Shown one piece after another: positions 5,799 to 21,915 of a stretch of DNA of 56,429 nucleotides. The notes under the pieces were generated by a model that did no database searches, was not told the DNA's origin, and saw only the letters and a list, made by a program, of their open reading frames with translations. The position numbers and the translations under genes were made by a program. Each line of letters starts with the position of its first letter. The stretch's first letter is position 1. The stretch is taken from positions 744,001 to 800,429 of the forward strand of contig NW_027271814.1 in assembly GCF_040938485.1 (NCBI RefSeq). The letters are read 5' to 3'. The DNA comes from Diadema antillarum (lineage: Eukaryota).

Positions 5799-5812
5799 GT
5801 TGCCATAGCAAC
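5799..5812. promoter_or_regulatory. Consensus RFX X-box-type motif GTTGCCATAGCAAC
   Basis: Exact match to the 14-bp GTTRCCATRGYAAC form, outside any repeat I recognise, next to a CpG-rich segment and two TGAGTCA sites (5679, 5753). Confidence 0.5.
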
Positions 5813-16415: not shown

Positions 16416-19400
16416 GATTATACTGATAAAGTTTTTAATTGGTGTGTTCTTATCCCTAACTTACATTTTAGAACTATCTAAAAGCACTAGAGCTGGGTTT
16501 TTGTTCATCTGTAAATGGTAAAAACTGCCTTTAACCCCCGTCATGGGTGGTCTGATGGTCTGAAATGGAAACAGAAAATAGAAATGGAGAAAAGTTTGCT
16601 CGCTCATTGCACAGAGGCACTGAAAACAGCAGGTTCATGTCAGCTCTGTAACATGCTCCTAAGAAGTGCAGTGTCATTGATTGAGAGGCTAGTGGCAAGT
16701 ATTTTTATTGATTCAAGAAAATGAGAGAATCAGCAGTTAGCAATTTTATTATCATTCAGAAATTTTGCAGTGTCCGTCTTACAAATTTATCCAAGAAGAA
16801 TGCATCCAATTTATAATGTTGCATTATTATTTTTTTTTTAGATTGTCTCATGGCACTTCACTCCTTTAAAAGCTCAGCCATTCTGTTCGCTGCCCTGTTT
16901 TCAGACACACTAAAATTTTTGTCATTCTTTTGATACCTTCTTTATAATGAGTGCATGATTATTGTAACATTGACCTCATAAATTCTCTGTGTTATCTCAA
17001 AAAAGCAACTGTCAGATGTTTCAGTCTTTAAAAAAAAAGACAAAATTCTACAAACATATTTTGATGGGGAGTCCAGGGTAAATCAGTAGGAAATTGGTGA
17101 TTTTAAACGTCACGCAAACACACAACTTTGTTACATTTCTGTCCGCAGGCAAAATTGCTTTGAAATTGAGAAGCTTTGATAAGAATGAAGGCTGTTGCCT
17201 TTGTCGGTTCTCATTATGTAATTGCCAATTTGACCCCGAGGTCATCTGAGATAGGCAGGATGCGAGTGTAGTTTGATTAGCACATATCTCAAACAGTAAG
17301 CTGTTCACTACCTAACAGGTGATTTGATGATCCAGCCATCAATCATGCTAGGGAAAAGAAGGGGCTCCTTGTAAACAAGCTTGGGCTTTCACCCAGGTCT
17401 TTAAACACATCATTAGTGCTTACAGTTTCAGGTTTCAATTAGGATTTTATGATTTGTTGACAGTCATGTGATGTTAATTGATGTTCCTGAAAGACGATGT
17501 GTACATATGCCCTTGATTTTTGGACCATTAGCGAACAAAGTGCATTTTAGTATGATAGAAGAAGTTCAAAGAAGAATCATTTCGTCTTTAATTATTTCAT
17601 GTGATAATCTGTATCTTTCGAATTATTATATTATGGCAGATTGGGCATTGATTTTGAAAAGTATTCCAAGATTACATATCATTCAATTAATACAATTTGT
17701 AATAGTGTTGAGAAATGATTGATCCAATACAGGCATTATAGCAAGTAGTGCCTTGAGAATGAGCAGGAATAGTTGGAACGCCTCCATTTGGCTGGGAGAA
17801 GATAAGCACAAGGGTTGGGGGGGGGGGGGGGGGGGGGGGGGGGGTAAAAGAGAGATTATCCCAGAAATTACCTGTGAAGTATTTAAAGAGATGAAGAGAA
17901 ATTTCAGTTGTCATGGCTACTGATCCCTATAGGTATGGGTTCTAAATTATTCAACATTAGCCGTACACTTATTGCCTAAAGAAGTCTGAGTAAGTTGATT
18001 GTCTGCATTTTTTCTATTCTTTGGTTTTTTTTTTTTGTCCAGTTTGATATTTGATTTATGTCCATTTAGTATGATTATTAAAGAAACTCTGCATTTTGTG
18101 TATCAAACTGTATGCACAGTATAACTGCTCAAACTTTGAAAGCTGAATATTCAGGTAATGGAAATATCCGTAGTGATTCTTTAAGTTAAAAGATACTTGT
18201 GAAATATATATGATCTGTAGGAGATTAGTAAGATGACACAGTGTGTCCAGCGTTATAATACTGTGTGACATCTTATACCCATGGACCCTTCATTAGGGTT
18301 TACAATTATACTCTTCATACTCACAAAGGCTGGTATGAAATAGAAATACCAACACAACAACATTGTAAACAGATAATGTTTGTTTCTCCAATATCTCAAA
18401 TTTTGCTAGTGTCCTTTGGCAGTTTCAGATATTTGATCATTTGTTATTGCCAAGTGCAAATATGCCTTGTTTCATGTGTGATCAGTAATTTGACCTGCCT
18501 TCTTCAAATCACAATTTGAATAAAAAAAGAAATAGAAGAGAGATAATTGGAATGTTGATGAAACTTGATGTACTCGTCTTCATATTTCTCAATCTATGAA
18601 TGTGAGTGAAAGCAGACCAAACAGATAAACATATTGAACTGAAAAGATTTCCTTCATTATCAGTGGGTTTCATAAATGAGAGGACTTTATTGAATGGACT
18701 TTCTCAACCTGTGTCTAAAAAAAGAAGATAGCAACAAAAACATTTCATATAAAGAAATCCTGACAACTGACTTCCTTTTTCCTTATTGTTACAAAGTGTT
18801 TGTGTTAATATTTGAGTAGTACTTATATGAACCGGTGAATTTAAGTCACATTGATCATCTAACTGAATGGAGTGCCACTCATGGGTGTATGGGCAATTTA
18901 AGATGAACACCAATATGTAGGGCAAGAGTTCCTTTTTAGTACAGAGATCTTATAGAGCTGTCAAGTTAGAGTGATGGTATTGGTTGAGGTGAGGATTCTG
19001 CCTTCAACTTTTTGCAAGATACTTAACAACCACTTTATGAAATGTTACACAGCATATAATTCGAGAGGAATTAGTTTCTGGGATTATACTTTTGTGTCAT
19101 GTACCCGGATCTAATCTCATAGGCAGTAAACATTTGTTTGATTGTGAGAAAGTCACCTGGATAGACAGAGTCCACTGCCACTTTGATGACAAGAAAGGTT
19201 TTCCATACCTTACATGGAGACCTCCCGGTGATAATGGATTTGAATCAAGAACCTTCCATACTGTGTGATGGATACACTGACCACAGAGCTACCAAATTCT
19301 GTTCCTTCTCCTGTAGCTCAGGCAGATAGGCTATCAGTAGAAATAATGACCAATGTCAATTTTCTCTCACTTTCTTTCTCTCCCCTCCACCTTTACTATC

Positions 19401-19536
19401 TGCTGTCTATTTCTATCTTCCTTTGTCTATATGCCTGTCACGCTCTTTCTTTCCCTAATTTTATTTTCTTTTAATATCCTGTTTCTGTGTTTCTCTGCCT
19501 ATATATCTCTCTGTTTCATTCTTCTATACCTTGTCA

Positions 19537-20598
19537 TTATACCCCCGCCAAACGAAGTTTGAAGGGGGTATATAGGAATCAGCGGACGGTCGGTCGGGCG
19601 GTCGGTCGGGCGGTCGGGCGGTCGGGCGGTCGGGCGGTCGGGCGGTCGGTCGGGCGGTCGGTCCGTTGCAAATCTTGCGTCGCGAACTACTTCCTCAGTT
19701 TTCAACCGATTCCCATAAAACTTGGCACAGATGTGTGCCTTGGGTTGTAGATGTGCAAGACGTATTTTTTGACAGTACCCAAAAGTACGTTGCCATGGTA
19801 ACGGCATATTATGGGCAAAAATGGGTACAAATCTTGCGTCGCGAACTACTTCCTCAGTTTTCAACCGATTCCCATAAAACTTGGCACAGATGTGTGCCTT
19901 GGGTTGTAGATGTGCAAGACGTATTTTTTGACAGTACCCAAAAGTACGTTGCCATGGTAACGGCATATTATGGGCAAAAATGGGTACAAATCTTGCGTCG
20001 CGAACTCCTCCCACAGTTTTTGATCAATTTTTATGAAATTAGGTACAGATGTTCATCTGAATATGTTAATGTGCAAGACACATATTTCCGCAGTGGCAAA
20101 AAGTGCGTTGCCATGGTAACGGCATGTTATTGGTAAAATATAGGGCAAAATGCTTCATGGCAAAACTGCTTCATCTGTGATCTTCCAATTCTCATGGAAT
20201 TCATATTGAATGTTTGTCTTAGGATATAGGTCAGCATGACACATTTCTTGACAGTGACAAAACGTATGTTGCCATGGTAACAGCTCACATATTATGAGCC
20301 AAAATGATGGAAAATTTTGTGTTGCAAACTACTTCCTCAGTTTTTGCCCAATTTCCATGAAACTTGGTACAGATGTGTGCCTTTGGTTGTAGATGTGCAA
20401 GACGCATTTTTCGACAGTACCCGAAAGTACGTTGCCATGGTAACGGCATATTAATGGCAGAAGATCAAGGAAAGATCTTGCGGATTTAACTACTTCCTCA
20501 GTTTTTTGACCAAAGCTTATCAAATGTTGTTTTGACCAAAGCTTATGAAATGTTGTTTGGCGGGGGTATAACCAGTTGCTGTAGCGACATTTCTAGTT
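19537..20598 (+). mobile_element. Non-autonomous Helentron-associated element (HINE; DINE-1/pearl-like) with 159-bp internal tandem array
   Basis: 13-bp subterminal inverted repeat ttatacccccgcc (19537-19549) / ggcgggggtataa (20559-20571), adjacent partial inverted repeat gggggtata (about 19564), (cggt/cggg) microsatellite 19585-19662, monomers at 19669, 19828, 19987 plus two diverged and one partial, 3' stem-loop gttgctgtagcgac and end atttctagtt. Confidence 0.85.
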
Positions 20599-20636
20599 CT
20601 TTTCATCTTTCCTTTCTTTTTATTTTTGGCCGACAG

Positions 20637-20865
20637 ATCCCCACACCAAAAAGCTGAAGGACCTCTTATCCAGTATCCAGCCACCGGAGGTGGAGCAACC
20701 CTCGGCGCGCTCGGTGACGGTGAGGTGGTCGATACCGGAGCCGTACCACGTGGGCCAGGGTGATGAAGACCTGTACGAGGACCGGGGGATTGATCCTGCA
20801 GCCATCAGTTACGAGCTGACCGTTGTGGACAAGTCCAAGAGCAGCAGTCCGAAAACCATTCAATG
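20637..20865 (+). CDS. FNDC3: Internal coding exon of an FNDC3A/FNDC3B-like gene (linker plus N-terminal part of first FN3 domain)
   Basis: Polypyrimidine tract plus cag acceptor (AG 20635-20636) and ATG|gtaagt donor (20866). GC-rich, 75 open codons: (D)PHTKKLKDLLSSIQPPEVEQPSARSVTVRWSIPEP...ISYELTVVDKSKSSSPKTIQ. Resembles remembered FNDC3A sequence DEETKAFEALLSNIVKPVASDIQARTVVLTWSPP...YGYEVLIS. No in-frame ATG, so absent from the ORF track. Confidence 0.9.
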
Positions 20866-21840: not shown

Positions 21841-21915
21841 AAGTGTCCTGAAAGTGTCTCGAAAGTGTCTCATGGGTGAAGTGTCTCATGGGTGAAGTGT
21901 CTCATGGGTGAAGTG
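21841..21915. repeat. Short tandem repeat (aagtgtc core; 11-, 11-, 16-, 16-, 16-bp spacing)
   Basis: aagtgtctcatgggtg three times, preceded by two shorter variants. Confidence 0.85.

What the first reader, a model, noticed from the sequence alone, without database searches (positions are those of the whole stretch)
19669..20490. Transposon-borne array of five perfect RFX X-box motifs next to an FNDC3 exon
Every 159-bp-type monomer of the HINE carries GTTGCCATGGTAAC (19789, 19948, 20107, 20268, 20431), matching the canonical X-box GTTRCCATRGYAAC. The 14-mer is unchanged even in monomers 3 and 4, which are heavily diverged elsewhere, suggesting constraint. A Helentron-derived satellite-carrying element could seed RFX (cilia/sperm) enhancers genome-wide or use a germline factor for its own mobilisation. 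An independent X-box at 5799 points to RFX input on this gene. This is the best candidate for an undescribed system here, but the function is inferred.
Basis: partly seen in the sequence, partly recalled or inferred. Interest (0 to 1): 0.72.

Follow-up and report, generated by a model that had tools for sequence, protein, structure and literature searches.

The report
Rolling-circle transposon carrying RFX-site repeats
A young, very abundant non-autonomous rolling-circle transposon (probably in an echinoderm genome) keeps a perfect match to the RFX "X-box" in each of its 160-bp internal repeats; the motif is preserved in the lineages that keep transposing, but inserted copies, this polymorphic one included, lose it as fast as neighbouring sequence.

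Summary
GTTGCCATGGTAAC occurs five times, once per ~160-bp monomer. The array sits in a 1,058-bp Helentron-associated element (HINE, window 19539-20596) with the expected terminal structures, inserted into a TT.

The assembly holds about 2,500-2,700 such elements and 22,640 exact copies of the motif.

The monomers are seven fixed subtypes in a fixed order, 55-93% identical to each other. The only long invariant stretch among them is exactly this 14-mer. An older sister family with 16 monomers also keeps it. So the motif is constrained, but the constraint acts on the transposing (master) lineages.

Inserted copies are not protected. The motif is intact in 94.3% of type-C monomers, against 92.9% and 95.1% for the two neighbouring 14-mers.

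The window copy is absent from the second copy of this locus in the assembly. It is therefore a recent, polymorphic insertion, not a fixed enhancer of the adjacent FN3-domain gene.

RFX is the best candidate binder: the motif matches the consensus, variants equal validated C. elegans X-boxes, and RFX genes are present. Binding itself is untested.

Verdict: a known kind of element with a new, testable feature.

The parts
19539..20596 (+). Whole non-autonomous Helentron (HINE), 1,058 bp. TT flanks it on both sides (19537-19538 and 20597-20598).
   Evidence: Boundaries come from comparison with other copies and from flank logos of 64-70 copies. The empty site on C1155:25479-25508 reads ..GTCA-TT-CTTTT... 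Contigs from other runs break at 19533-19537.
19538..19572 (+). 5' subterminal inverted repeat (TATACCCCCGCCAAAC) and its nearby complementary inverted repeat (19557-19572), which form a terminal hairpin.
   Evidence: pairs I1 and I3. The 27-nt core of this left flank occurs 1309+1427 times in the assembly at up to 2 mismatches.
19583..19663 (+). Microsatellite (CGGGCGGT / GGTC-type) between the left flank and the array; its length varies between copies.
19669..19986 (+). Two identical type-A monomers (19669-19827 and 19828-19986).
   Evidence: The number of type-A monomers varies from 1 to 3 between copies.
19987..20147 (+). Type-B monomer.
20148..20311 (+). Type-C monomer, the most diverged type. 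There is no CpG in or beside its motif in the family consensus. The window copy carries a shared A-to-C variant just upstream of the motif.
20312..20471 (+). Type-D monomer.
20472..20558 (+). Truncated start of an E-like monomer, followed by a 26-bp tandem duplication (20504-20558).
   Evidence: nhmmer matches 20473-20529 to model positions 2-57. Tandem repeat finder, period 26. Comparison with the long 7-monomer variant.
19789..19802 (.). X-box-like 14-mer GTTGCCATGGTAAC, copy 1.
19948..19961 (.). X-box-like 14-mer, copy 2.
20107..20120 (.). X-box-like 14-mer, copy 3.
20268..20281 (.). X-box-like 14-mer, copy 4.
20431..20444 (.). X-box-like 14-mer, copy 5.
20559..20571 (+). 3' subterminal inverted repeat GGCGGGGGTATAA.
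   Evidence: pair I1.
20575..20596 (+). 3' hairpin (GTTGCTGTAGCGAC; the family consensus is GTCGC..GCGAC) followed by ATTTCTAG, the 3' terminus.
   Evidence: CTAG and the following TT are invariant in 62-64 of 64 copies.
20637..20865 (+). Exon encoding part of a fibronectin type III domain. Its 3' splice site lies 40 bp downstream of the element.
   Evidence: Reading (cag|AT... and ..ATG|gtaagt). Protein-atlas nearest clusters are fn3 (score 0.92). Weak hit to PDB 1WK0, named KIAA0970 (E 0.19). No Pfam hit.
5799..5812 (.). Separate X-box match GTTGCCATAGCAAC, outside any repeat.

Best explanation
Window 19539-20596 is a recently inserted, still polymorphic copy of a non-autonomous Helentron (HINE, the same kind as sea-urchin Tsp and Drosophila DINE-1). 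It moves as a unit by rolling-circle transposition into TT dinucleotides.

Its cargo is a short array of about 160-bp monomers that exist as fixed, old subtypes: A, B, C, D in the short form and A to G in the long form. Every subtype keeps the near-palindrome GTTGCCATGGTAAC.

Shown here: the motif is under strong purifying selection among the lineages that go on transposing, and under no detectable selection once a copy has landed.

Inferred: the motif is a cis-acting requirement or advantage for the element's own spread. Its most likely ligand is a host RFX transcription factor binding as a dimer. The array of sites would then keep the element in accessible or transcribed chromatin in cells where RFX is active, such as sperm-forming cells and the ciliated cells of the early embryo. 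That would expose it to the single-strand-specific Rep nuclease of an autonomous partner.

My probabilities: HINE identity and selection at the level of transposing lineages, about 0.9. RFX binds the motif in vitro, about 0.85. RFX binding is what selection maintains, about 0.45.

A by-product is more than 20,000 perfect RFX sites scattered through the assembly. These are raw material for new enhancers and a possible sink for RFX, but they decay neutrally.
For: Anatomy:
- 5' subTIR plus inverted repeat, microsatellite, tandem repeats, 3' subTIR, 3' hairpin and CTAG terminus.
- TT on both sides in 62-69 of 64-70 copies.
- An empty site holding a single TT in the duplicate contig C1155 (collinear with the window).

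Abundance and youth:
- 2,736 left flanks and 22,640 exact motifs, against 3 for the reversed control.
- Copies differ from their consensus by about 1%.
- 146 Helitron-type Rep matches, most of them in open frames of 3,381-3,464 aa.

Constraint between monomer types:
- The subtype order is the same in all copies.
- Seven types are 55-93% identical, with 60 of 166 columns invariant. The longest invariant run is the 14-mer and the next longest is 4. None of 100,000 column shuffles reaches 14.
- Across 23 types, including a 16-monomer older family, the majority-base frequency is 0.966 in the motif, 0.688 elsewhere and 0.848 in the next-best window.
- No shared (subfamily) variant occurs at non-CpG motif sites, against 33 such events elsewhere.

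No constraint after insertion:
- Whole-assembly counts give 94.3% intact for the motif, against 92.9% and 95.1% for its two neighbouring 14-mers. Motif versus pooled neighbours: odds ratio 1.07, p 0.57.
- Losses hit all motif positions.

RFX likeness:
- The motif fits GTTRCCATRGYAAC.
- Variants in old monomers (GTTTCCATGGTAAC, GTTACTATGGCAAC) are identical to the validated xbx-1 and osm-5 X-boxes. bbs-7 is one base away from the HINE motif (PMC3245922 Table 1).
- RFX DNA-binding domains are encoded at several loci.
Against: - No binding, accessibility or expression data exist. RNA-library contigs hold monomers, but transcription is not shown.
- A non-autonomous rolling-circle element has no known need for a host transcription factor.
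- The central repeats of oyster HINEs lack X-box words, so this is not a general HINE property.
- The autonomous partner was not identified, so it is unknown whether it carries the same repeats.
- A 65-copy sample suggested a slight deficit of private mutations in the motif (odds ratio 0.68, p 0.046). The genome-wide counts did not bear this out. With copies only about 1% diverged, weak selection on a minority of copies cannot be excluded.
Confidence: 0.6

Rival explanations
1. The motif is a repeated binding site for a protein encoded by the autonomous Helentron, or for some other host protein that is not RFX. It would work like the iterons of rolling-circle replicons or the subterminal repeats of hAT elements. 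The match to the X-box would then be coincidental.
For: The constraint acts on transposing lineages and not on inserted copies. That is what a cis-acting transposition signal predicts. Many intact Rep-encoding elements are present. A palindrome suits any dimeric DNA binder.
Against: The motif matches a roughly 19-bit host consensus in both half-sites and in spacing. Its natural variants coincide with validated X-boxes. Related HINE flanks in oysters carry unrelated repeats without this motif (PMC7492417), which argues that central repeats are not the Rep recognition site. Known Helitron transposases recognise the element ends (general knowledge).
Confidence: 0.2
2. One reading: the array is a host-exapted RFX enhancer acting on the adjacent FN3 (FNDC3-like) gene, and the family has been co-opted widely as cilia or sperm enhancers.
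For: There are five perfect X-boxes 200-800 bp upstream of an exon. A separate single-copy X-box lies at 5799 in the same locus. More than 20,000 sites are available genome-wide.
Against: The insertion is absent from the second copy of the locus in the same assembly. Inserted copies lose the motif at the neutral rate. The element lies in an intron, whereas validated C. elegans X-boxes mostly lie within about 300 bp upstream of the start codon (PMC3245922 Table 1).
Confidence: 0.07
3. The 14-mer is kept for a DNA-level reason unrelated to protein recognition. Either it is a hotspot for unequal exchange or conversion that builds and homogenises the arrays, or it forms a hairpin in the single-stranded transposition intermediate.
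For: The motif is a near-palindrome that extends to 16 nt (C...G) in most types. alifold finds only this small self-hairpin in the monomer. Conserved boxes in satellite monomers have been proposed as recombination sites (discussion in PMC7492417).
Against: Conversion would also homogenise the flanks, yet the sequence diverges sharply right at the motif edges. The hairpin has 6 pairs including a G-T pair and a 4-nt loop, and the consensus fold is weak at -6.8. The deletion that produced the short variant does not break at the motif.
Confidence: 0.08
4. There is no constraint at all: the monomers share the motif because they arose recently from one another, or by chance.
For: Copies of the element are very young.
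Against: The monomer types are 55-93% identical, with an invariant run of 14 that none of 100,000 shuffles reaches. An older family about 50-60% identical keeps the motif in 16 monomers.
Confidence: 0.01

Closest known systems
HINE / DINE-1-like non-autonomous Helentrons (Thomas et al. 2014, PMC4067079), including sea-urchin Tsp (Cohen et al. 1985, listed there) and oyster Cg_HINE (PMC7492417)
   Same: Same modular build: 5' subTIR plus nearby inverted repeat, microsatellite, short array of 140-180-bp satellite-like repeats, 3' subTIR, 3' hairpin. Same insertion into TT, lack of coding capacity and high copy number.
   Different: Each monomer here carries an invariant match to a host transcription-factor consensus. 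I found no report of this for Tsp, DINE-1 or Cg_HINE. Oyster CL1 monomers lack the motif. The Tsp paper is not in the library, so its monomer sequence could not be compared.
RFX X-box promoter motif of ciliary genes (DAF-19 targets in C. elegans, PMC3245922; RFX1-3 in vertebrates)
   Same: Same 14-bp imperfect palindrome with two 6-bp half-sites and an AT spacer. Both half-sites of the HINE motif occur in validated X-boxes.
   Different: Validated X-boxes are mostly single or double sites within about 300 bp of a start codon. Here there are 4-16 sites at 160-bp spacing inside a mobile element, about 22,600 in the assembly, and function is not shown.
Transposon families that spread transcription-factor sites (for example the RFX motifs reported as amplified in pig SINEs, PMC10471783)
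   Same: A repeat family multiplies ready-made binding sites across a genome.
   Different: Those cases are retrotransposons, noted by motif enrichment. Here the site is shown to be the most constrained part of a DNA (rolling-circle) element's internal repeat, while inserted copies decay neutrally.
Conserved boxes in satellite DNA monomers (CENP-B-box-like motifs; two conserved segments in oyster Cg170-related monomers, PMC7492417)
   Same: A short island of low variability inside otherwise fast-evolving tandem monomers.
   Different: The sequence is different. It matches the RFX consensus, not the CENP-B consensus. The arrays are short and dispersed, not centromeric as far as tested.

Membership tests
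HINE (non-autonomous Helentron) | 11-15 bp subterminal inverted repeats, the 5' one a few nt from the end and the 3' one about 38-60 bp from the 3' end | tested here: met
   Arms 19537-19560 and 20548-20571. The 5' subTIR starts at the element's first bases. The 3' subTIR starts 38 nt before the terminus.
HINE (non-autonomous Helentron) | Short inverted repeat complementary to the 5' subTIR, 3-22 bp downstream (DINE-1 type) | tested here: met
   19538-19553 pairs with 19557-19572, 3 nt apart (pair I3).
HINE (non-autonomous Helentron) | Short palindrome or stem-loop 8-35 bp from the 3' terminus | tested here: met
   The palindrome at 20575-20588 ends 8 nt before the CTAG terminus. The stem is perfect in other copies.
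HINE (non-autonomous Helentron) | Microsatellite and/or central tandem repeats between the two flank modules | tested here: met
   Tandem repeat finder rows at 19583-19663 and 19669-20453.
HINE (non-autonomous Helentron) | Insertion into a TT dinucleotide without any other target duplication | tested here: met
   The empty site on C1155:25479-25508 has one TT where the filled site has TT-element-TT. Flank logos of 64-70 copies agree.
HINE (non-autonomous Helentron) | An autonomous Helentron partner (Rep-helicase-endonuclease) sharing the termini | not tested
   Rep domains are abundant, most of them in open frames of 3,381-3,464 aa.
RFX X-box | 14-bp imperfect palindrome GTNRCC-NN-RGYAAC (broader form RYYNYY-WW-RRNRAC) | tested here: met
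   Compared with 31 validated motifs in PMC3245922 Table 1.
RFX X-box | An RFX-family protein encoded by the organism | tested here: met
   PF02257 gives 19 exon matches over the cut-off at several loci.
RFX X-box | Bound by RFX, with expression depending on the motif or on RFX | not testable with these tools
   Needs EMSA or DAP-seq, CUT&Tag and reporter assays.
RFX X-box | Promoter-proximal position upstream of a ciliary gene | tested here: not met
   The sites are intronic, inside a mobile element, 200-800 bp upstream of an internal exon. The insertion is polymorphic.

The most novel reading that the evidence does not exclude
A host transcription factor (RFX) serves as an obligatory cofactor of rolling-circle transposition. 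The enigmatic central repeats of this HINE family would be arrays of RFX sites that license mobilisation in RFX-active germline or early embryonic cells. The resulting tens of thousands of perfect sites would measurably titrate RFX or rewire ciliary and sperm gene regulation in this echinoderm.
Probability: 0.2. Interest if true: 0.8.

Novelty: new variant of a known kind. Interest (0 to 1): 0.52.

Why it matters
It has never been explained why HINEs and other Helentron derivatives carry satellite-like internal repeats. In this family the most constrained part of the repeat is a recognisable host-factor site, which turns that question into simple experiments: RFX binding, chromatin accessibility of copies with and without the motif, and transposition of mutated donors.

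The case also separates two things that are often conflated. One is selection on a binding site for the transposon's own benefit, which is seen here. The other is co-option of inserted copies by the host, which is not seen here.

If RFX does bind, more than 20,000 perfect sites would outnumber the usual few hundred functional X-boxes. The family would then be a natural system for studying transcription-factor titration and the birth of enhancers.

Tried and rejected
- A BLAST-type search of the own genome with a monomer found nothing, because very common words are skipped.
For that reason the autonomous partner and older copies were not read, and I did not try to get them by another route.
- Rfam found no RNA family in 19400-20700.
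- A consensus fold of 22 monomer types showed only the palindrome's own small hairpin.
- Reverse-strand ORFs starting at the ATG inside the motif are not conserved in the old family (my reading), so a coding explanation was dropped.
- Oyster Cg_HINE supplementary sequences lack the motif.
- The Tsp paper is not held.
- The search of earlier findings returned nothing.
- Reads: the four runs laid are contigs that cover only the repeat and not the unique flanks, so they show neither expression nor the allele state.
- Pfam gives no hit on the exon. FNDC3 identity rests on one weak PDB hit.
- The copy with the same left flank but SAP/SWIM-like ORFs (L064) is not adjacent to any Rep match, so it is not evidence for the autonomous partner.

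Full report
**Observation.** They lie in a tandem array of period about 159-163 bp at 19669-20453. The motif fits GTTRCCATRGYAAC, and a sixth, different match (GTTGCCATAGCAAC) lies at 5799.

**What carries the array.** The array is the middle of a 1,058-bp element at 19539-20596. The element has these parts:
- a 5' subterminal inverted repeat with a complementary inverted repeat 3 nt downstream;
- a GGTC/GGGC-type microsatellite;
- the monomers;
- a 3' subterminal inverted repeat;
- a short hairpin, then ATTTCTAG.

Other copies share exactly these ends and then diverge into unrelated flanks. In 64-70 copies the element is preceded and followed by TT, with a further preferred T three bases upstream. 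This is the published anatomy of Helentron-associated interspersed elements (PMC4067079; PMC7492417). The supplement of PMC4067079 lists the sea-urchin Tsp family among them.

Runs labelled "echinoderm metagenome" hold the stretch, so the host is probably an echinoderm.

**This copy is polymorphic.** A pattern made of the two unique flanks finds one empty site, C1155:25479-25508. It reads ..GTCA-TT-CTTTT... C1155 is collinear with the window: the unique sequence around 5799 recurs 13.7 kb upstream of the empty site on that contig, as it does in the window. RFX-domain hits also come in pairs of equal score on different contigs. The assembly therefore holds many loci twice, and C1155 is most simply the other haplotype.

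The insertion is thus recent and not fixed. It went into a single TT, 40 bp upstream of the 3' splice site of an exon (20637-20865). That exon encodes part of an fn3 domain. A weak hit to 1WK0, named KIAA0970, has E 0.19. From memory KIAA0970 is FNDC3A, so the FNDC3 label is plausible but barely tested.

**Abundance.**
- The exact 14-mer occurs 11,107 + 11,533 times in the 1.75-Gb assembly, against 0 + 3 for the reversed control.
- The left-flank core occurs 2,736 times at up to 2 mismatches.
- Type-C monomer contexts occur about 2,450-2,500 times.
- More than 90 of the first 100 motif places lie in arrays with about 160-bp spacing.

All counts are per assembly and may be up to twice the haploid number.

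**Structure of the family.** I took 70 copies ascertained by the left flank and not by the motif, plus the window copy. Of these, 65 had both ends. They fall into two forms:
- a short form with monomers A (1-3 copies), B, C, D;
- a long form with A to G and a different right flank.

The "heavily diverged" monomers 3 and 4 of the window are types B and C. They are present with the same sequence in all copies. Their divergence is old and inherited from the master element; it is not local decay.

**Is the 14-mer more conserved than the rest? Between monomer types, yes, overwhelmingly.**
- The seven types are 55-93% identical, and 60 of 166 columns are invariant. The longest invariant run is exactly the 14-mer and the next longest is 4. 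None of 100,000 column shuffles gives a run of 14.
- A second, older HINE has 16 monomers and a related right end. It is present in two copies on contig C1, and its monomers are about 50-60% identical to A-G. It keeps the motif or close variants in every monomer.
- Across all 23 types the majority-base frequency is 0.966 in the motif, 0.688 elsewhere and 0.848 for the next-best window, the block GAAATTTGGCACA.
- Sequence diverges sharply right at the motif edges, which argues against gene conversion as the cause.
- Among copies of the young family, no shared (subfamily-level) variant occurs at non-CpG motif positions, against 33 such events elsewhere in the monomers.

**Within inserted copies, no.** In the 65-copy sample, 328 of 355 monomers have the exact motif. 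The losses are spread over all 14 positions and are most frequent at the two CpG edges. Private substitutions were slightly fewer in the motif (0.56% against 0.83% per site, p 0.046).

I therefore made a whole-assembly test in the type-C monomer, whose consensus has no CpG in or beside the motif. Each 14-mer was counted as intact given that 10 nt were intact on both sides:

| 14-mer | Intact / total | Percent intact |
|---|---|---|
| X-box motif | 2,313 / 2,452 | 94.3% |
| Left neighbour | 2,329 / 2,507 | 92.9% |
| Right neighbour | 2,363 / 2,486 | 95.1% |

Motif against pooled neighbours gives odds ratio 1.07, p 0.57. Inserted copies lose the motif as fast as any other sequence. The copies are only about 1% diverged, so weak selection on a small subset cannot be excluded. 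There is no sign of family-wide exaptation.

**What binds it?** This is inference. The motif has both half-sites and the AT spacer of the X-box. In the table of 31 validated C. elegans X-boxes (PMC3245922):
- GTTGCC is the left half of xbx-2, xbx-4 and bbs-7;
- GGTAAC is the right half of xbx-1 and odr-4;
- bbs-7 differs from the HINE motif by one base;
- two variants found in old HINE monomers (GTTTCCATGGTAAC and GTTACTATGGCAAC) are identical to the xbx-1 and osm-5 sites.

The genome encodes RFX DNA-binding domains at several loci. By my own estimate the degenerate consensus carries about 19 bits, so a conserved transposon motif would seldom match it by accident.

Several other explanations found no support:
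- no RNA family matches the element;
- the monomers have no conserved fold beyond the palindrome itself;
- the reverse-strand ATG inside the motif does not open a conserved frame;
- oyster HINE repeats do not contain X-box words, so the motif is a property of this lineage and not of Helentron repeats in general. That makes a universal Rep-binding role unlikely.

**Mechanism proposed.** Selection that acts only on lineages that continue to transpose points to a cis-acting advantage in mobilisation. The most economical version is that RFX dimers occupy the array in cells where RFX is active. From general knowledge these include spermatogenic cells and ciliated cells; in echinoderm blastulae nearly all cells are ciliated. 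Occupancy would keep the element open or transcribed and so accessible to a Rep nuclease that acts on single strands.

A source of that enzyme is plausible. There are 146 Helitron-type Rep matches, most of them inside uninterrupted frames of 3,381-3,464 aa. I could not read their ends, so the partner is not identified.

The rival with real weight is that the motif is bound by an element-encoded protein or another host protein.

**Expression.** Contigs from two environmental RNA libraries and from two runs of the same or a related organism cover only the repeat, with loose ends at 19533-19537. They do not cover the unique flanks. This confirms the 5' boundary and the dispersal of the family, but it does not show transcription.

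**The site at 5799.** It is outside any HINE monomer and occurs only in the window and its duplicate contig. It may be a real host X-box, but nothing here links it to the transposon or shows function.

**Verdict.** The carrier is a known kind of element. The new feature is an invariant, master-level-constrained RFX-type site in every monomer of two related families, and I found no report of it in the searchable literature. The reading that this copy feeds RFX input into the neighbouring gene, or that the family has been widely co-opted, is not supported.

Noticed in passing
L064 (G000:C7:2226774-2229404), minus strand: The same left flank as the HINE is followed not by monomers but by ORFs with a SAP domain (E 3.8e-08) and a SWIM-like CxC...CxH motif. 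About 17 copies at 98-100% protein identity exist in the assembly, and none lies next to a Rep match. This looks like a cargo-carrying relative using the same 5' end.
   Followed up: partly
G000, e.g. C138:1575008-1575598, C160:97959-98549, C53:426431-427021: There are 146 Helitron_like_N (Rep) matches, most with identical scores and inside open frames of 3,381-3,464 aa without stops. This indicates a large, apparently intact and very recent family of autonomous rolling-circle elements. Their termini and any endonuclease domain were not read.
   Followed up: partly
G000:C1:486516-490819 and C1:782580-787042 (L006-L013, L018-L026): Two copies, in opposite orientation on one contig, of an older HINE. 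It has 16 monomers in two blocks (GGCAAC-type and GGTAAC-type X-boxes) and a right end like that of the long young variant.
   Followed up: yes
G000:C1155 versus the window (C926); RFX hits on C11/C388, C494/C877, C1294/C1358, C100/C748, C52/C134, C665/C900: Many loci appear twice with equal scores on different contigs, so the 1.75-Gb assembly probably contains both haplotypes for much of the genome. Copy counts per assembly overstate haploid numbers.
   Followed up: partly
window 5799-5812: A single-copy X-box match, GTTGCCATAGCAAC, lies outside any repeat. It is one base away from the validated che-13, bbs-7 and bbs-1 X-boxes of C. elegans. Its function is unknown.
   Followed up: partly
flanks of 70 HINE copies (L031-L100): Besides the TT target, 68 of 70 insertion sites have a T three bases upstream of the TT (T-N-N-T-T), and the downstream flank is T-rich. 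This is a target preference beyond the dinucleotide.
   Followed up: partly
L027 (G000:C1:861435-864448), minus strand around 1500: An isolated exact 14-mer sits in a different sequence context, which shares with the monomers a TTCAACC..AAATTTGG-like block upstream. It may be a solitary relative of the monomer.
   Followed up: no
window 21863-21915: A perfect 16-bp tandem repeat (AAGTGTCTCATGGGTG, 3.3 copies) lies about 1 kb downstream of the exon.
   Followed up: no
runs X9, X10 (seawater and marine metatranscriptome libraries) on window 19534-20540: Environmental RNA-library contigs contain HINE monomers at 90-100% identity, including a 182-nt piece identical to 19952-20133. These may be transcripts or carried-over DNA of larvae or gametes.
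   Followed up: no
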